A stretch of 63,831 nucleotides of DNA, filler included, from Perkinsus chesapeaki ATCC PRA-425 (taxonomy: Eukaryota > Protista > Perkinsozoa): the NCBI GenBank assembly GCA_013115145.1. It is 7 parts of 7 records of this genome, joined end to end, with 100 filler letters (N's around TTAATTAATTAA, not from the genome) between each part and the next. Parts side by side here need not be neighbours in the genome. Positions count along the whole stretch, not along the records: positions 19,721 to 26,128 come from JAAPAO010001087.1; 6 more parts are not named here. One strand, written 5' to 3'. Positions 19,721 through 26,128 of the stretch are shown piece after piece. Within the stretch, counting starts at the first letter, position 1. Each line of letters starts with the position of its first letter. The notes beneath the pieces were generated by a model. That model was not told where the DNA came from. It saw only the letters and a list, made by a program, of their open reading frames with translations, and did no database searches. Made by a program: the position numbers and the translations under genes.

Positions 19721-20118
19721 TGCAGTGGTAGTAGCGACAGAAGATGTGGTCGTCGTGGTAGTGGAAGATGTGGTCGTAGTGGTAGTAGAAGATGTGGTCG
19801 TAGTGGTAGTAGAAGATGTGGTCGTAGTGGTAGTAGAGCACGTGGTCGTAGTGGTAGTAGAGCACGTGGTCGTAGTGGTAGTAGAGGATGTGGTCGTAGA
19901 GGTAGTAGATGTGGTCGTAGTGGTAGTAGCGGATGAGGTCGTAGTGGTAGTAGAGGATGAGGCCGTAGTCGTAGTGGTCGTAGAAGATGAGGTCGTAATG
20001 GTAGTTGATGTGGTCGTAGTGGTAGTAGAGGATGAGGTTGTGGTCGTACTGGTAGTAGAAGATGTGGTCGTAGTGGTAGTAGATGTGGTCGTAGTGGTAG
20101 TAGAAGATGTGGTCGTAG

Positions 20119-20119
<1 letters not shown>
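19721..20119 (-). repeat. Thr/Ser-codon minisatellite; downstream half of the mucin-like ORF
   Basis: Units of ~21-24 nt (ACTACCACTACGACCACATCTTCT) encoding TTTTTTSS variants. Confidence 0.9.

Positions 20120-20150
<31 letters not shown>
20118..20150 (-). repeat. (AAC)11 3' tail of the LINE
   Basis: (GTT)11 on the + strand, directly between the 3' UTR and the target repeat. Confidence 0.85.
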
Positions 20151-20158
20151 GGAGTTTT

Positions 20159-20192
20159 ACGTCCGACGCCGAAAAACGGCTTGGTCAGACGT
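20159..20192 (-). promoter_or_regulatory. 3'-UTR stem-loop of the LINE
   Basis: ACGTCTGAC-CAA-GCCG-TTTTT-CGGC-GTCGGACGT: a 9-bp outer stem (one G-U pair) plus a 4-bp inner stem, 8 nt upstream of the tail. Confidence 0.6.
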
Positions 20193-20282
20193 CCCTCCCC
20201 TATCCGCCAAAACGGCTTCAAGGGAAAACAAACCAAGAATACGAAATGCCATCAAGTAAAAATTTCAAGATAGATGCTCAGT

Positions 20283-23200
20283 TTAGTTTCTTGCTTGTAC
20301 AGATCTTTCTAAATGGCAAGCAAATTTTAGCATATCCTTTATTCTAAGCTCGCTCACCGTAAGTTGTCGAAAACTACCGAGAGGTTCAACCCAAGCAGGG
20401 CGCTGGCTAGCTCGAGGCTCAGCGTCACAAAAGAAGACAGCATGCCTCACATTGTCTAATTGCATACAAGTATCACAGAGATAGCTCCGATGACCGGGTC
20501 TATACTTGTAAGAGTTCAGCGCAGTAGTATGACCAACCAACAGGCGACAAAGAGGGCCTCCGTCAGACCGATGATGTACCACTTTCAGCAAATTATTAAG
20601 CTGAAAAGGTGTCGCCAAAGCCTCAGCAGTATCTCCAGATAGGCGACGAAGTCGTTCACGTTTGGACCTTTCAAAATAATCCAGTATGTAATCCTTCGTG
20701 CATGAGATACTGGAAGGAAGCTTAGTAATACACGGCAAAGATCTGGCTTGATTTGCAAGCAAGTCAACCTTTTCATTGCCTTCAGAACCAGAGTGTCCTG
20801 CAATCCAGTAATAAGATACCTTTATACCACGGGCAGAGCAAATAGTGTCCAGATTCCTTATTTGGTTAAGTAAGTCAGAAGTTCTGCACGTTTGTAAAAG
20901 CTGCAGACCAGACCTACTATCACTAAATAAGGTCACCTCACAAGCGCTAAGATTATCAACAATCCATCTCAGACACATGCTGATGGCCATAAGTTCAGCA
21001 TGCATGATGGAGATGTTAGTAGAGAGTCGTTTCCCTTCAAAGTGGGAAGCCCCATCCTCCTTCTTAATGAAGAAAGCGGCCCCAACTGAGAGCGCCATTT
21101 TTGAATTATGCCTGATCATAGAACCATCAGTATATGCCTTCCATGGGGTTAGCACTTGTTTCTCCCGTTCAAGGGTGGAGGTTTTATCATCACCAATTAC
21201 TATACGAGAGACCAAGTCACATGACATATACGGATCAGCGCCAAGCCTATCTCCACGGTAGTCGGGGGGAAAGCCAAAGGCAGCCAGGATCTTGTCAATC
21301 TTTGCTCTTTTAACTACCGCTCTTTTACCAATCATATCATTAAAGGAAGCCTTATGGTAGTGGATAGTAATAGCTTTACCCAGCAGAATATCACTTAAAG
21401 GGGGATAGCCCGATAGGATATATACATAATCTAGTGGAGTGGAGCGCCTTAACCGAAGAGCCCCCCTTAGGAAGGTATTGGCAGCTGTATCAATAAAATC
21501 CCTCAGGTAGGACATACAAAGAGAGGCACCATAGACTTCAATGCCATAGCTAACTCTAGGTATAAATATCTTTTCACAAATTTGGAGGCAGCGGAAAGGC
21601 GTTAATCCAACTTCTTGCTTAATATATCTAAGTACAGCCGAGTTCAGCTGCAAAGCAAGCAGAACTCTGTGTCTAAGGTGTGGAAGGAAGCCAAGCCTCT
21701 GGGTCAAGATGACTCCCAGGACATTTAATTCCTTCACTAGGCCAGTAATATCACGAAGATACAAGCTGCGGATATTGGACATAACATGACACTTCGAACG
21801 CTCCAGGCTCAGATTTGACACCTGAGCTTCTTCTTTAATAATATTGTAGGCTGACTCGATATCTGCTGCAATTTGTTCTGCAGAGACGCCTGATGACCAG
21901 GCTAGAAGAAGATAACAGTCGTCGGCATAGCATATCCACTTCCATTTCACATTTTTAAATCCACGTATCAACCTCTCATTCACTCTCTTGGGGATATCAC
22001 CCGAGCCAGAGATGAAGAGGAGAGGCGAGAGGCCACCCCCTTGAGGACATCCTTTATCAGGCGCTGACTTTTTAAATATAGTTCGCCCACCATATCTGAC
22101 CCTGGCGCCACGATCACCTAACCAAGACCTGATCCAATTAACTATATAGCTACAGGCGCCAGCTCCTTCAAGGGCCCGCACGATATCAATATGTCGTATT
22201 TCACCAAAAGCATTACTGTAGTCAGTGCCAAGAACAGCCCAGCGTGCATTAGAAGTAATCCAGGATATGATATTCTGAACAACTCCAATAGTACCCCGAC
22301 CTTTAACGAAACCAAATTGGACACCGTTATCATAGAACTGCTTACTCACTGCAGTCAATCTATCAAGTATCAGGAATTCGGCAGCTTTACCTAAGGTATT
22401 GGTTAGGGAGATGGGCCGCACGGACTTTATGGAGCGAGGGTCTTTACCATTCTTATTAATAAAGACTACCTCGGAGAACCTCCAGGCCGGAAGCACATAC
22501 CCACTCGCAACCGAGTAGGAAATAATGCGAAGCAACTCGTCTACGAAGCAGGTCGGCAGATTTTGCAGACACCGCAGCCTTATACCATCTTGACCTGGCA
22601 TCTTATCTTTTGACGCAAACCTCATTTTAACCACCTTAGTAAATTCCTCATTCTTAAAGGGGGGAAAGTCTGTATCGGAGACATCAGAACCAAGGCGCGT
22701 ATCACCTTCTGAGATTGTATTAAAGAAAGCGTCATAGTCCAGATCCACAGCGCCAACATATGTAGAAGCCAAACGGCTCAGAGAGGAGTCCAGATCATAG
22801 TCACCTTCGAAAATTCTACAAGGAGGAGAGGGTGCTCTTCTAATCTTATTATATAGTTGTCGGTCTTGGAGATCAGATATACCAGATATATACGAGCAGA
22901 AGGCCTCATGCTTCTTCATGTTAATACTCCTACGGTACTCATTCCTACAGCACCGATATTCCTCATATCGTCCTTGACGATGCAGCCGTTTTAGCTTCTT
23001 TCTCAGGTTACAGAGCTCGTCGTCCCACCAAGGCAGTGTATTACCCTTTCTAGCTTTTGCTCTAGTGCCACTAGGACGAAGTGGACACGAGCTCTTAAAA
23101 GCACCCTGTATTAATTTAACCAGCAAGTCATAGCGATGACGCAGATCTCGAATATTAGCTATGTCGTCCTTGCAAAGCAGATATTCATTATTCTTCAAAA

Positions 23201-23954
23201 TATCACAATATCTGGTCCAGTCGCAAGAGTAATACTGATAGTCATATAGGTCATGTTCCTGTATAGGGGACAGGGGGGCATCAACATTACCTTGAATATT
23301 GAAGAAGATAGGGTAGTGATCCCATAAACCATCCTCTTCTAGAACATGCCAACCAGAGCATACTACATTACCACTACTAAATGTAACATCGATGAAGGCT
23401 TTTCCTTCATTTCTATTCCTACTTACAATAGACTTGTTGCAGAAGGTGGGTGTATCGCCACAGCACTCACATGTACAGTTACGACCAGTTAAGTGATAAG
23501 TCAACCATTCTCCTCGTAAACGTTGTTCTCTAGTAGTAACCATATAGTCCGGACACCATAACGGAGAAACTCCATTAGAATCACCACCAATGATAAGGTT
23601 ATTAGCATTAAATTTGTCTAGACAGTCAAAAAAGGAGAGCATATGGAAGCTATTAAAATTAGGAGGTATGTAGAAGGAAGAGACTAAAATATTTTTATAG
23701 TACATTAAAGTGATATAGTCGGAATCATCAGGGATATAGCAGCAGTCATTTAGAATCTGAGTAGACGCTAAAATAGCACATTTGCTGTTTATGTCCTTGC
23801 GAAACGTACGAAAGTTAGGAATATAAAATTGCTTAGGAGGTTCGGAGATAAGAACAATATGTACAGAGATATCCAGCTCATAGAGCAGACCAAAGAAGGC
23901 TGATAGTACATCAGAAGAGCGCCTCGAATTACATTGCAAGACTTTTAAAGACAT
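20283..23954 (-). CDS. LINE ORF2: APE endonuclease - reverse transcriptase - RNase H - CCHC
   Basis: APE motifs LKVLQCN, LISEP, IIGGDSN, FIDVTF, WDHYPI. RT motifs PGQDG, RPISLT, QFGF, DYSNAFG, GCPQGGGLSPLLF, YADD, VLGV. RNase H motifs YTDGS, AELMAI, FSDS, WIAGHSGSEGNEKVD. C-terminal CDTC-x7-H-x4-C. Confidence 0.95.
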   Translation of the reverse strand: MSLKVLQCNSRRSSDVLSAFFGLLYELDISVHIVLISEPPKQFYIPNFRTFRKDINSKCAILASTQILNDCCYIPDDSDYITLMYYKNILVSSFYIPPNFNSFHMLSFFDCLDKFNANNLIIGGDSNGVSPLWCPDYMVTTREQRLRGEWLTYHLTGRNCTCECCGDTPTFCNKSIVSRNRNEGKAFIDVTFSSGNVVCSGWHVLEEDGLWDHYPIFFNIQGNVDAPLSPIQEHDLYDYQYYSCDWTRYCDILKNNEYLLCKDDIANIRDLRHRYDLLVKLIQGAFKSSCPLRPSGTRAKARKGNTLPWWDDELCNLRKKLKRLHRQGRYEEYRCCRNEYRRSINMKKHEAFCSYISGISDLQDRQLYNKIRRAPSPPCRIFEGDYDLDSSLSRLASTYVGAVDLDYDAFFNTISEGDTRLGSDVSDTDFPPFKNEEFTKVVKMRFASKDKMPGQDGIRLRCLQNLPTCFVDELLRIISYSVASGYVLPAWRFSEVVFINKNGKDPRSIKSVRPISLTNTLGKAAEFLILDRLTAVSKQFYDNGVQFGFVKGRGTIGVVQNIISWITSNARWAVLGTDYSNAFGEIRHIDIVRALEGAGACSYIVNWIRSWLGDRGARVRYGGRTIFKKSAPDKGCPQGGGLSPLLFISGSGDIPKRVNERLIRGFKNVKWKWICYADDCYLLLAWSSGVSAEQIAADIESAYNIIKEEAQVSNLSLERSKCHVMSNIRSLYLRDITGLVKELNVLGVILTQRLGFLPHLRHRVLLALQLNSAVLRYIKQEVGLTPFRCLQICEKIFIPRVSYGIEVYGASLCMSYLRDFIDTAANTFLRGALRLRRSTPLDYVYILSGYPPLSDILLGKAITIHYHKASFNDMIGKRAVVKRAKIDKILAAFGFPPDYRGDRLGADPYMSCDLVSRIVIGDDKTSTLEREKQVLTPWKAYTDGSMIRHNSKMALSVGAAFFIKKEDGASHFEGKRLSTNISIMHAELMAISMCLRWIVDNLSACEVTLFSDSRSGLQLLQTCRTSDLLNQIRNLDTICSARGIKVSYYWIAGHSGSEGNEKVDLLANQARSLPCITKLPSSISCTKDYILDYFERSKRERLRRLSGDTAEALATPFQLNNLLKVVHHRSDGGPLCRLLVGHTTALNSYKYRPGHRSYLCDTCMQLDNVRHAVFFCDAEPRASQRPAWVEPLGSFRQLTVSELRIKDMLKFACHLERSVQARN

Positions 23955-25069
23955 AAGTATGCAGAGAAAGGACCACAAAGGGGGGGACCATCAGGAGTAT
24001 AGTCAACCTTCTCCAGTTTAGAACGTAAAGCCTCAATCTTCTTCATACAGGGAGGTCCGTTCAGCACACAATGACTTTTCTCTCCACATAAAGAGCAACA
24101 CATACCTTCCTTATCAGTCTTCCCTTTGTGGGGGCAGTCAGCAAGTCTGTGGCTATGGGCACAATACAGACATTTCTTATCTTCAGAGCATTTCATATTT
24201 CTACCATGTAGAGCACCACAATCATAACAATAGCTGACTGATATATAATCATGACACCTTAACTTCCTACAGTCTACAAATAAACCATCATTCTTAATCA
24301 TGTAGTCTCTGTCTTCTGAAGGAACTCTAAATACAATATAGTTTTCCTTAGTAATAACTTGTTTCCATTTATCAACTGACAGACAGCTAGCTAGCTTAGA
24401 GCATTGGTCAGTAATATCAGCCGGGGATAGACCTTCACTGCGTATCAAGACTTCAGGCATTAACTTGTCTTGAGCTTTAACCGCGAAAGCACCATTTTTC
24501 GAAGCAGACTTTAAACAGCTCAGAACTTCTTGGGCATGCTCAGAGGAGACAAGCACAGCCACATCAGTCTTACGCTGCATAACCTTATTAACTGGTAGTT
24601 TAGAGGAAGTCAATGTTTCGCATACTTTACCACAGATTCGTTCAACCGAACTCTTCATACTGGAATCCGTAGAGGGTTGGTTCCCAGACTTTCTTACCGA
24701 AAGAAGAACATTTCTTCTATTAGGAGGGACTACGGCTCTTTGGCCAGTGGGTATACCAGAAACCAGGGCGTTACGATAAGAGGGACCCAAAGAAAGATTA
24801 GATCGGTTCAACGGTATATTTCTTGTAGCATCCAGTTTTGTTCGAAGCTTACGGTTCTCTTCAAGAACACCAATGTAGGCAGACTTTAACTTTCCAACCA
24901 GAGAGATAATATTTTCCAACAGGGCCTTGTCATGAGAGGCCGAGACTTCGATTAGATCAATAATACTGTCGCAATTATCAACAAAACTGTTAGTCACTTC
25001 TTCACTGTCGTCTGCCCAGTCGCTGCCGTCGTGAGATTGCTGCCCGCTGGGGATGCGGGGGGGAGGCAT
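23945..25069 (-). CDS. LINE ORF1 (gag-like, three zinc knuckles)
   Basis: N-terminal coiled coil, then CYDCGALHGRNMKC, CLYCAHSHRLADC and CSLCGEKSHCVLNGPPC. Its stop overlaps the ORF2 start. Confidence 0.88.
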   Translation of the reverse strand: MPPPRIPSGQQSHDGSDWADDSEEVTNSFVDNCDSIIDLIEVSASHDKALLENIISLVGKLKSAYIGVLEENRKLRTKLDATRNIPLNRSNLSLGPSYRNALVSGIPTGQRAVVPPNRRNVLLSVRKSGNQPSTDSSMKSSVERICGKVCETLTSSKLPVNKVMQRKTDVAVLVSSEHAQEVLSCLKSASKNGAFAVKAQDKLMPEVLIRSEGLSPADITDQCSKLASCLSVDKWKQVITKENYIVFRVPSEDRDYMIKNDGLFVDCRKLRCHDYISVSYCYDCGALHGRNMKCSEDKKCLYCAHSHRLADCPHKGKTDKEGMCCSLCGEKSHCVLNGPPCMKKIEALRSKLEKVDYTPDGPPLCGPFSAYLCL

Positions 25070-25102
25070 TTGGGATTAGAAGGGATAAAAATAAAACAAA
25101 CT

Positions 25103-26000
25103 TGTGGTCGTAGTGGTAGTATAAGATGTGGTCGTAGTGGTAGTAGAGGATGAGGTCGTAGTCGTACTGGTAGTAGAAGATGCGGTCGTAGCGGTAGTAG
25201 ATGTGGTCGTAGTGGCAGTATAGGTGGTCGTAGTGGTAGTATAGGATGTGGGCGTAGTGGTAGTATAGGATGTGGGCGTAGTGGTAGTAGAAGATGTGGT
25301 CGTAGTGGTAGTAGAGGATGTGGTTGTAGTGGTAGTAGAGGATGTGGTTGTAGTGGTAGTAGAGGATGAGGTCGTAGTGGTAGTAGAGGATGAGGTCGTA
25401 GACGTAGTGGTAGTAGAAGCCGAAGTCGTAGTGGTAGTAGAAGTTGCGGTCGTAATGGTAGTAGATGTGGTCGTAGTGGTAGTAGTGGTAGAAGATGTGG
25501 TCGTCGTGGTAGTAGAAGATGTGGTCGTAGTGGTAGTAGCGGATGAGGTCGTAGTGGTAGTAGAGGATGAGGCCGTAGTCGTAGTGGTCGTAGAAGATGA
25601 GGTCGTCATGGCAGTTGATGTGGTCGTAGTGGTAGTAGAGGATGAGGTTGTGGTCGTAGTGGTAGTAGAAGATGTGGTCGTAGTGGTAGTAGAAGATGTG
25701 GTCGTAGTGGTAGTAGATGTGGTCGTAGTGGTAGTAGATGTAGTCGTAGTGGTAGTAGAAGATGTGGTCGTAGTGGTAGTAGAAGATGTGGTCGTAGTGG
25801 TAGTAGAATATGTGGTCGTAGTCGTACTGGTAGTAGAAGCTGTAGTCGTAGTGGTAGTAGAAGCCGTAGTCGTAGTGCCAGTAGTCGTAGCAGAAGCCGT
25901 GGTCGTAGTGGTAGTAGAGGATGTGGTCGTAGTGGTAGTAGAGGATGTGGTCGTAGTGGTAGTAGAAACCGTTGACGTACTGGTGGTAGTGGATGAGACC

Positions 26001-26060
<60 letters not shown>

Positions 26061-26128
26061 AATGTGGTTGTAGTAGTGGCAGAAGAGGTTGTCGTAGTGG
26101 TAGATTGTGCGACCGTAGCATCAATAGA
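25103..26128 (-). repeat. Thr/Ser-codon minisatellite; upstream half of the mucin-like ORF interrupted by the LINE
   Basis: Open frame from the contig edge (SIDATVAQSTTTTTSS...) to TAA at 25076 inside the element. Includes a perfect (GTA)20 at 26001-26060. Confidence 0.88.

What the first reader, a model, noticed from the sequence alone, without database searches (positions are those of the whole stretch)
19721..26128. Intact LINE sitting in a Thr-codon minisatellite: candidate repeat-targeted retrotransposon of mucin-like genes
Seen: a 4983-bp element with uninterrupted ORF1/ORF2 and recognisable APE, YADD and RNase H motifs. It is flanked on both sides by the same ACTACCACTACGACCACATCTTCT-type repeat, with a 12-bp direct repeat at both junctions, and it is co-oriented with the Thr reading frame. 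Known: APE-type elements such as SART/TRAS (telomeric repeats) and Waldo (AC repeats) are repeat-specific. Inference: this may be a family specialised on protein-coding Thr/Ser repeats of surface mucins, a target class I do not recognise as described. It could also switch off or diversify surface-antigen genes.
Basis: partly seen in the sequence, partly recalled or inferred. Interest (0 to 1): 0.82.

Follow-up and report, generated by a model that had tools for sequence, protein, structure and literature searches.

The report
Perkinsus LINE favouring threonine-codon repeats
An intact jumping gene (LINE) of the shellfish parasite Perkinsus sits inside a threonine/serine-coding repeat, and its relatives in three Perkinsus species do so far more often than chance, so the lineage seems to prefer, but not require, such repeats.

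Summary
On the minus strand, 20120-25102, lies a 4983-bp non-LTR retrotransposon. ORF1 has three CCHC knuckles. ORF2 is uninterrupted and carries endonuclease, reverse transcriptase (YADD) and RNase H. The 3' tail is (AAC)10-11, and a 12-bp duplication flanks the element. It lies inside a co-oriented 24-bp Thr/Ser-coding array.

The host is Perkinsus chesapeaki or a very near relative. A 96.7% identical 5'-truncated copy lies in a P. chesapeaki assembly, in non-Thr intergenic DNA with an 11-bp duplication. The family is therefore not strictly repeat-specific.

I could read at least one junction for about ten independent insertions of this Perkinsus-only LINE clade. Four abut Thr-codon arrays, always in sense: this window, two loci in P. 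olseni and one in P. marinus. A fifth lies in a 46-bp array at an ACC/ACT run. Such runs cover about 0.1% of the other flanking DNA sampled.

Two further traits are shared across the clade:
- a 3' hairpin supported by covariation;
- 5' ends carrying 2-14 nt of the Perkinsus spliced leader, which implies trans-spliced, probably promoter-less RNAs.

Verdict: a target preference, not strict specificity. The mechanism is inferred, either pairing of the tail with the target or an endonuclease motif. New variant of a known kind.

The parts
25103..26128 (-). Upstream part of the host Thr/Ser-coding 24-bp array (342 open codons: 70% Thr, 21% Ser)
   Evidence: TRF. Frame analysis. Codon usage: all four Thr codons, and both TCN and AGY Ser codons.
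25103..25114 (-). 5' copy of the 12-bp target-site duplication ACTACGACCACA
20120..25102 (-). Full-length non-LTR retrotransposon (4983 bp, a multiple of 3)
   Evidence: Identical contigs in public runs.
25070..25102 (-). 33-nt 5' UTR. Its first AG (up to CAAG if flank letters are counted) matches the 3' end of the Perkinsus spliced leader. The host frame stops at TAA 25076-25078, and the ORF1 ATG is in the same frame three codons later.
   Evidence: Spliced-leader sequence from PMC3101222.
23945..25069 (-). ORF1, 374 aa. No Pfam hit. 30% identical over its full length to ORF1 of a P. chesapeaki LINE.
24047..24229 (-). Three CCHC zinc knuckles of ORF1
   Evidence: The Cys/His positions are conserved in L001.
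20283..23954 (-). ORF2, 1223 aa, uninterrupted. Its ATG lies 7 nt before the ORF1 stop.
23304..23690 (-). AP-endonuclease domain (GGDSN and WDHYP motifs). The best solved relatives are the R1Bm and TRAS1 endonucleases.
21708..22457 (-). Reverse transcriptase domain, YADD at 21918-21929
20745..21137 (-). RNase H domain (YTDGS, AELMA, FSDS and NEKVD motifs)
20427..20477 (-). C-terminal CX2CX7HX4C motif of ORF2
20159..20192 (-). Conserved 3' UTR hairpin: a 9-bp stem, a 3-nt bulge, a 4-bp stem and a 5-nt loop. It is followed by AAAACTCC and the tail.
   Evidence: Alignment of 8 elements. Pair counts: 93% paired, 6 pairs with changes on both sides, 0 of 500 shuffles as high, slid controls at most 41%.
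20120..20150 (-). (AAC)10A tail, or 11 units if the ambiguous AC of the duplication is counted. It reads as ACA (Thr) codons in phase with the host frame.
   Evidence: The same kind of tail is seen in L002, L004, L006, L009 and L010.
20108..20119 (-). 3' copy of the 12-bp target-site duplication
19721..20119 (-). Downstream part of the host Thr/Ser array (133 open codons), cut by the edge of the piece
19907..20080 (-). Distinctive variant block of the array, 171/174 identical to 25517-25690. This is a higher-order duplication inside the array.

Best explanation
This is an intact, probably still mobile LINE of a Perkinsus-specific clade. The host is P. chesapeaki or a very close relative.

Insertion. 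The element entered by target-primed reverse transcription into a Thr/Ser-coding minisatellite of a mucin-like ORF. It lies in the sense orientation and made a 12-bp duplication.

Target choice. The clade has a marked but not exclusive preference for runs of Thr codons (ACN). I infer two possible causes, which may act together:
- The (AAC)n tail, which reads equally as (ACA)n, can pair with the nicked antisense strand (NGT)n at two of every three positions. Every readable 3' junction shares an AC with the target.
- The R1-like endonuclease may favour a C^AC / ACTACC^AC-type site.

Expression. The 5' ends of family members carry truncated spliced-leader sequence. I therefore infer that the RNA is cut out of a host read-through transcript by spliced-leader trans-splicing at the AG at the element's 5' end. 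A sense insertion in a transcribed gene would then supply the promoter that the 33-nt 5' UTR lacks. The conserved 3' hairpin is the likely handle for the reverse transcriptase.

Shown: the anatomy, the duplications, the enrichment in Thr arrays, co-orientation, spliced-leader relics and hairpin covariation.
Inferred: the cause of the preference, trans-splicing of this particular copy, and activity.
For: Anatomy and intact ORFs.

Host:
- The best relatives are all Perkinsus.
- A 96.7% identical 1.46-kb truncated copy lies on a P. chesapeaki contig.
- That copy's two 3' UTR indels are the second variant seen in the same public runs, at equal depth: 90.5 against 88.9.

Duplications at other copies: 11 bp in L002 and 8-9 bp in L004.

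Thr arrays at junctions, all co-oriented:
- window;
- L006/L008, both sides;
- L009;
- L007;
- L004, which sits in a 46-bp array right after an ACC ACC ACT ACC ACC run.

Background: ACN runs away from LINE junctions cover 36 nt of about 47 kb of flanks. At a generous 1% background, 4 of 10 has a binomial probability of about 2e-6.

The arrays code for protein: all four Thr codons and both Ser codon families are used, and Cys-rich modules follow the array in L006.

Other shared traits:
- The clade is monophyletic (100/100), and Thr-array copies fall in three deep branches.
- The 5' ends match the 3' end of the spliced leader over 14, 14, 9, 6, 4, 4 and 2 nt (leader sequence from PMC3101222 and PMC9399869).
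- Hairpin covariation.
- The endonuclease is nearest to R1Bm and TRAS1 among solved structures.
Against: - The only other copy of the same family (L002) is not in a Thr array. L003, L010, L001 and L005 have unique flanks. The preference is therefore partial, and it rests on about ten insertions fetched by protein similarity from fragmented assemblies.
- The background frequency comes from only 47 kb next to LINEs, not from whole genomes.
- Pairing of tail and target is only 2 of 3 positions, and the shared AC is short. L005 has a (CA)4 tail.
- In the window the spliced-leader match is only 2-4 nt, two of them ambiguous with the duplication.
- No RNA data were examined.
- The 3' junction of the window copy rests on the assembly alone.
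- Read-depth data suggest only one full-length and one truncated copy of this family, so recent activity is unproven.
Confidence: 0.6

Rival explanations
1. There is no integration bias. The LINE inserts anywhere. Copies are kept, or stay active, mainly where they are harmless and transcribed. Length-variable Thr/Ser arrays of dispensable mucin-like genes tolerate sense insertions and supply transcription for a promoter-less, trans-spliced element.
For: - The 5' UTR is short, and spliced-leader relics imply dependence on upstream transcription.
- All Thr-array copies are in sense.
- Non-array copies include old or degenerate ones such as L003, which has frameshifts and no tail.
Against: - The 5'-truncated, hence dead-on-arrival, copy L006/L008 is also inside Thr arrays.
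- L004 is in a non-coding array, exactly at an ACN run.
- Selection for transcription would predict sense insertions in any gene, not specifically in ACN runs.
Confidence: 0.2
2. This is an ordinary generalist LINE that landed in a repeat by chance, and the association in relatives is a sampling accident.
For: - The same-family copy L002 and several relatives lie in other DNA.
- The sample is only about ten insertions.
Against: - Four independent co-oriented Thr-array insertions in three species, against a background of about 0.1%.
- The only two arrays of period 20 or more in 52 kb of other loci end exactly at LINE 5' junctions.
Confidence: 0.1
3. The arrays derive from LINE tails. Long (AAC)n = (ACA)n tails decay and expand into Thr-codon-like arrays, so LINEs sit next to arrays that they or earlier copies created.
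For: - Tails reach at least 24-25 units in L009 and L010 and read as Thr codons.
- LINE tails are a known source of microsatellites (PMC3812793, listed, not read).
Against: - The arrays also lie upstream of the 5' ends.
- They have structured 15-30-bp units with Ser, Ala, Pro, Lys and Arg codons and both Ser codon families.
- They continue into Cys-rich coding modules and start from unique coding sequence in the window.
Confidence: 0.05
4. Assembly artefact: the element and the repeat flanks were joined wrongly in a repeat-rich short contig.
For: - The piece is only 6.4 kb.
- The 3' junction cannot be crossed by k=31 contigs.
- A 174-bp block of the left flank recurs in the right flank.
Against: - An identical 3678-bp contig in an independent study's run crosses the 5' junction by 50 bp.
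- The two blocks differ at 3 positions, so they are distinct loci.
- The same architecture occurs in independent assemblies of other species.
Confidence: 0.04

Closest known systems
Microsatellite- and telomere-repeat-specific APE-type LINEs (Waldo, Mino, Kibi, Koshi; SART1/TRAS1 of Bombyx).
   Same: - An APE-RT(-RNase H) LINE with a CCHC ORF1 that is inserted in tandem repeats in one orientation.
- The endonuclease is nearest to the R1Bm and TRAS1 endonucleases among solved structures.
   Different: - Those targets are 2-6-bp non-coding repeats, hit with near-absolute specificity.
- Here the targets are degenerate Thr-codon (ACN) runs inside 15-30-bp protein-coding units.
- Only about 40-50% of the sampled copies are in them.
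- The tail (AAC)n is not a copy of the target.
Drosophila I factor and the I / R1 / LOA supergroup
   Same: - ORF1 with three CCHC knuckles.
- ORF2 with APE, RT, RNase H and a C-terminal Cys-His motif.
- A trinucleotide-repeat tail: (TAA)n in I, from my own knowledge.
- The nearest named outside relatives are arthropod proteins.
   Different: - Clade membership is untested, because no curated reference set was at hand.
- The Perkinsus elements form their own clade (100/100) against the best outside hits.
- The I factor has an internal promoter and no repeat preference.
Retrogenes with relict spliced leaders in dinoflagellates and Perkinsus (Slamovits & Keeling 2008, cited in PMC2868825; PMC6050394 listed, not read)
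   Same: Truncated spliced-leader sequence at the 5' end of a retrotransposed unit. It shows that the template RNA was trans-spliced.
   Different: - Here the trans-spliced template is the LINE's own bicistronic RNA, not a cellular mRNA copied in trans.
- I found no report of this in the searched library.
Promoter-less, co-transcribed site-specific LINEs (R2/R1 in rDNA) and ingi/RIME in trypanosome RHS genes. From my own knowledge.
   Same: - Sense insertion in a transcribed multicopy or repeat target.
- A very short 5' UTR.
- Probable dependence on host transcription, followed by RNA processing that defines the 5' end.
   Different: - R2 uses a self-cleaving ribozyme. No Rfam family matched here, and trans-splicing is inferred instead.
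- The RHS site is a fixed 12-mer, not an amino-acid repeat.

Membership tests
APE-type non-LTR retrotransposon (LINE) | ORF2 with an N-terminal AP-endonuclease and a reverse transcriptase with the YxDD box | tested here: met
   Pfam Exo_endo_phos_2 and RVT_1 above their cut-offs. YADD, GGDSN and WDHYP motifs present.
APE-type non-LTR retrotransposon (LINE) | No terminal repeats, a simple-repeat 3' tail, target-site duplication, and 5'-truncated copies | tested here: met
   - (AAC)n tail and 12-bp duplication in the window.
- A 5'-truncated copy with an 11-bp duplication in L002.
- An 8-9-bp duplication in L004.
I / R1 / LOA supergroup (RNase H-bearing LINEs with a CCHC ORF1) | RNase H after the RT, and an ORF1 with CCHC knuckles | tested here: met
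   Pfam RNase_H. Three knuckles.
I / R1 / LOA supergroup (RNase H-bearing LINEs with a CCHC ORF1) | RT phylogeny placing the element inside a named clade | tested here: inconclusive
   - No labelled reference sequences were available.
- The tree only shows a Perkinsus-only clade, distinct from the best outside hits.
- Named outside hits are arthropod proteins.
- Endonuclease matches in the PDB are to R1Bm and TRAS1, with E = 1e-3 to 5e-2.
Sequence-specific (target-specific) LINE | Essentially all copies of a family lie at the same target sequence | tested here: not met
   - The same-family copy L002 is in unrelated intergenic DNA.
- L003, L010, L001 and L005 have unique flanks.
Sequence-specific (target-specific) LINE | Fixed orientation relative to the target repeat | tested here: met
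   All four Thr-array insertions lie on the ACN strand.
Spliced-leader trans-spliced transcript of Perkinsus | Spliced-leader sequence ACCGTAGCCATCTTGGCTCAAG at the 5' end of the RNA, or a relic of it in the retro-copy | tested here: inconclusive
   - Relics of 14, 14, 9 and 6 nt in relatives L009, L010, L001 and L007.
- Only 2-4 nt in the window copy.
- No RNA reads were examined.

The most novel reading that the evidence does not exclude
A whole LINE lineage of Perkinsus lives without a promoter. It aims at the sense strand of Thr-codon repeats in expressed mucin-like genes by pairing its (ACA)n RNA tail with the antisense (NGT)n strand. It is then released from the host pre-mRNA by spliced-leader trans-splicing at its own 5' AG. 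This would be the first retrotransposon lineage aimed at an amino-acid-coding repeat. It may also make or expand tandem arrays at its 5' junctions, and so drive length and copy variation of parasite surface mucins.
Probability: 0.3. Interest if true: 0.85.

Novelty: new variant of a known kind. Interest (0 to 1): 0.68.

Why it matters
Target-choosing LINEs are known for rDNA, small RNA genes, telomeric repeats and microsatellites. A lineage biased towards protein-coding Thr-codon repeats would be a new target class. It would also offer a natural test of how far tail-target pairing alone can steer target-primed reverse transcription.

The spliced-leader relics suggest a way for a LINE to do without a promoter in a trans-splicing organism. 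They may also explain the 'SL-like genomic sequences' reported in P. marinus in 2011.

For the parasite, which is an important pathogen of oysters and clams, such elements interrupt Thr/Ser-rich, probably extracellular proteins and might reshape them. Polymorphic insertions would make handy strain markers.

Tried and rejected
Searches that gave nothing:
- Exact look-up of ORF1 found nothing.
- The word search with ORF1 found no homologue in its length range.
- Two metagenome scans found nothing: by ORF2 and by the 3' hairpin pattern.
- Rfam at E up to 1 found no family in the piece, so there is no recognisable HDV-like or other ribozyme at the 5' end.

Limits of the public-run contigs:
- They are too short to show the flanks of other copies or an empty site, and they break at the (AAC)n tail.
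- No single-copy depth baseline was available. Copy number (one full-length plus one truncated copy) is inferred only from the equal depths of the two 3' UTR variants.

Readings considered and rejected:
- I considered a very long (627-bp) target duplication, because 19907-20119 is 98.6% identical to 25517-25729. I rejected it. Beyond that block the left flank matches other consensus-unit runs just as well, and the last 39 bp before the junction are plain consensus units.
- Naming the RT clade failed: cluster look-ups of outside hits gave almost no names.

Uninformative loci:
- L011 was uninformative, and the 3' end of L007 is hidden by a gap of N.

Tools not used because no claim needed them: structure prediction, complex prediction and the third word search.


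Full report
WHAT IS THERE

The piece 19721-26128 holds one non-LTR retrotransposon on the minus strand, at 20120-25102. It is 4983 bp long.

- 5' UTR: 33 nt.
- ORF1: 23945-25069, 374 aa. It has no Pfam hit but carries three CCHC knuckles at 24047-24229.
- ORF2: 20283-23954, 1223 aa. Its ATG lies 7 nt before the ORF1 stop.
- Pfam on ORF2: Exo_endo_phos_2 (E = 6e-8), RVT_1 (4e-24) and RNase_H (4e-11).
- Catalytic motifs all present: GGDSN, WDHYP, YADD, the four RNase H motifs and a C-terminal CX2CX7HX4C.
- 3' UTR: about 130 nt, followed by a tail of (AAC)10-11 at 20120-20150.
- The 12-mer ACTACGACCACA stands on both sides, at 25103-25114 and 20108-20119.

Both flanks are one 24-bp minisatellite.

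- Its Thr/Ser frame lies on the element's strand.
- The frame is open for 342 codons upstream and 133 downstream.
- It is restored in phase when the element and one 12-mer are removed.
- The array uses all four Thr codons and both Ser codon families. That argues for constraint at the protein level.

The strand and the tail are my additions.

IS THE ASSEMBLY REAL

Contigs of public runs from two studies hold the element.

- One run carries an identical 3678-bp contig spanning 21475-25152. That contig crosses the 5' junction.
- The runs of the other study match the whole body without a single difference.
- The 3' junction cannot be crossed, because the tail is longer than the assembler's word size.
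- A 174-bp variant block of the left flank recurs in the right flank at 171/174. I read this as a higher-order duplication within the array, not as a misjoin or a giant duplication.

WHOSE GENOME

- The word search found only a 32% identical protein of Perkinsus chesapeaki.
- The exhaustive search found a 486-aa protein 96% identical to the C-terminal 443 residues of ORF2. It lies on a P. chesapeaki contig, L002.
- At the DNA level, window 21610-20136 equals L002 10134-11608 at 96.7%. This is a 5'-truncated copy of the same family.
- Its two single-base indels in the 3' UTR are exactly the second variant seen in the public runs, at a depth of 90.5 against 88.9 for the window type.

I conclude that the host is P. 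chesapeaki or a very near relative. In that strain the family has about one full-length and one truncated copy.

The L002 copy ends in (AAC)5 and has an 11-bp duplication, ACCCATGTGAT. It lies between genes in DNA that is not a Thr array.

I then fetched every relative I could, using all 12 contig look-ups. All of the best hits are Perkinsus.

| Locus | Species | Flank at the readable junction(s) |
|---|---|---|
| Window | P. chesapeaki-like | Thr/Ser array on both sides |
| L006/L008 (one locus in two assemblies) | P. olseni | 5' flank: 5.2 perfect 30-bp Thr/Ser units; 3' flank: 12.3 units of an 18-bp Thr/Ser array starting right after the tail, running on into an ORF with two Cys-rich modules |
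| L009 (a different copy, 90.7% identical) | P. olseni | 5' flank: a pure Thr-codon array |
| L007 | P. marinus | 5' flank: a 27-bp Thr-rich coding array |
| L004 | P. chesapeaki | Inside a non-coding 46-bp array, directly after an ACC ACC ACT ACC ACC run, with an 8-9-bp duplication |
| L002 | P. chesapeaki | Non-Thr intergenic DNA, abutting a 30-bp x3 array |
| L003, L010, L001, L005 | P. olseni, P. chesapeaki | Unique flanks |

- All four Thr-array insertions are co-oriented with the Thr frame.
- Away from LINE junctions, ACN runs cover 36 nt of roughly 47 kb of fetched flanks.
- Even at an assumed 1% background, four of ten has a probability of about 2e-6. At 5% it is still about 1e-3.
- Assembly breaks at repeats should work against seeing arrays, not for it.
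- On an RT tree the Perkinsus elements are one clade (100/100). The Thr-array copies sit in three deep branches. The habit is therefore old, or it has arisen more than once.

OTHER SHARED FEATURES

1. A 3' hairpin just before AAACTCC and the tail. Across eight elements, 93% of cells pair, six pairs change on both sides, no shuffle of 500 reaches the observed score, and slid controls pair at 41% or less. This is the likely binding site for the reverse transcriptase.

2. Every readable 3' junction shares an AC between tail and target.

3. The 5' ends match the 3' end of the Perkinsus spliced leader, ACCGTAGCCATCTTGGCTCAAG (PMC3101222 and PMC9399869).
   - The matches run 14, 14, 9, 6, 4, 4 and 2 nt in seven elements.
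   - Each relic is preceded by unrelated DNA. The leader is therefore part of the retrotransposed unit, not a target gene.
   - A primer that Zhang et al. designed on 'SL-like genomic sequences' of P. marinus is identical over 22 nt to the 5' terminus of L009 and L010.

HOW IT PROBABLY WORKS

Shown: target-primed insertion with 8-12-bp duplications, a clade-wide excess in ACN runs in sense orientation, and template RNAs that were trans-spliced.

Inferred:

- The (AAC)n tail reads equally as (ACA)n. It can pair with the nicked antisense (NGT)n strand of any Thr-codon run at two of three positions, in register. This would stabilise priming there, much as poly(A) does on T-rich sites for L1.
- Alternatively, or in addition, the R1-like endonuclease prefers a site such as ACTACC^AC. 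That sequence is shared by the window and L004 targets.
- The 33-nt 5' UTR leaves little room for a promoter. In the window the host frame stops 8 codons into the element, and the ORF1 ATG follows in the same frame. A sense insertion in an expressed gene would supply transcription, and trans-splicing at the element's AG would supply the cap and define the 5' end.

For the window copy itself the leader relic is too short (2-4 nt) to stand alone.

WHAT IT IS NOT

It is not a strict site-specific element like SART, TRAS, Waldo or R2. It has no recognisable ribozyme. I could not name its RT clade.

NOVELTY

Full-text searches found no description of Perkinsus LINEs, of their target habits, or of spliced-leader-bearing LINEs. 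The library misses many journals and Repbase Reports, so prior description cannot be excluded.

I file it as a new variant of a known kind: a repeat-preferring LINE, with a new target class and a probable trans-splicing life style.

UNEXPLAINED

- The only two arrays of period 20 or more in 52 kb of loci L001-L005 are perfect, and they end exactly at LINE 5' junctions. They may be chosen targets, or arrays made or expanded by integration.
- A sister family about 10% divergent in ORF1 is about six times deeper in one study's runs and absent from the other's.

Noticed in passing
L002:10043-10134 and L004:3961-4172: Perfect (100%) tandem arrays end exactly at the 5' junctions of LINE copies: 30 bp x3.1 in L002 and 46 bp x4.6 in L004. 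They are the only arrays of period 20 or more in 52 kb of loci L001-L005. They could be chosen targets, or arrays created or expanded by integration.
   Followed up: partly
L009:174-187, L010:824-837, L001:90-98, L007:236-241: The 5' ends of the LINE copies carry 14, 14, 9 and 6 nt of the Perkinsus spliced leader. A published primer for 'SL-like genomic sequences' of P. marinus (PMC3101222, PmaSL-L1-like-F1) is identical over 22 nt to the L009/L010 terminus. Those unexplained sequences may be LINE 5' ends.
   Followed up: partly
window 19907-20080 and 25517-25690: A distinctive 174-bp block of variant repeat units occurs in both flanks at 171/174 identity. It is the only long near-identical block in the array, and indicates higher-order duplication inside the minisatellite.
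   Followed up: yes
window 23806-24206 and 24606-25096 (public-run contigs): A sister family about 10% divergent in ORF1 has contig depth about 6 times that of the window element in runs X2-X4. It is not seen in X1. A short shared stretch of the 3' UTR (20175-20232) shows the same excess in X2. Strains appear to differ in LINE load.
   Followed up: no
L006:4128-4580: Downstream of the Thr/Ser array the same frame encodes two copies of a Cys-rich module between Thr/Ser linkers. The module pattern is C..DA[FY]CDS..P.SYCM.W..P..CHG. This looks like a modular mucin-like extracellular protein that is not annotated in that assembly.
   Followed up: partly
window 25067-25078: The host Thr frame ends at a TAA eight codons into the element, and the ORF1 ATG follows in the same frame after two more codons. 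The element length (4983) is a multiple of 3, so the downstream array also stays in the host frame. This may be chance (1 in 3), or it may be relevant to reinitiation on read-through RNA.
   Followed up: no
L005:4290-4300: A more distant Perkinsus family has the same 3' hairpin but a (CA)4 tail instead of (AAC)n, and a unique flank. It would be a useful natural contrast for the tail-pairing idea.
   Followed up: no
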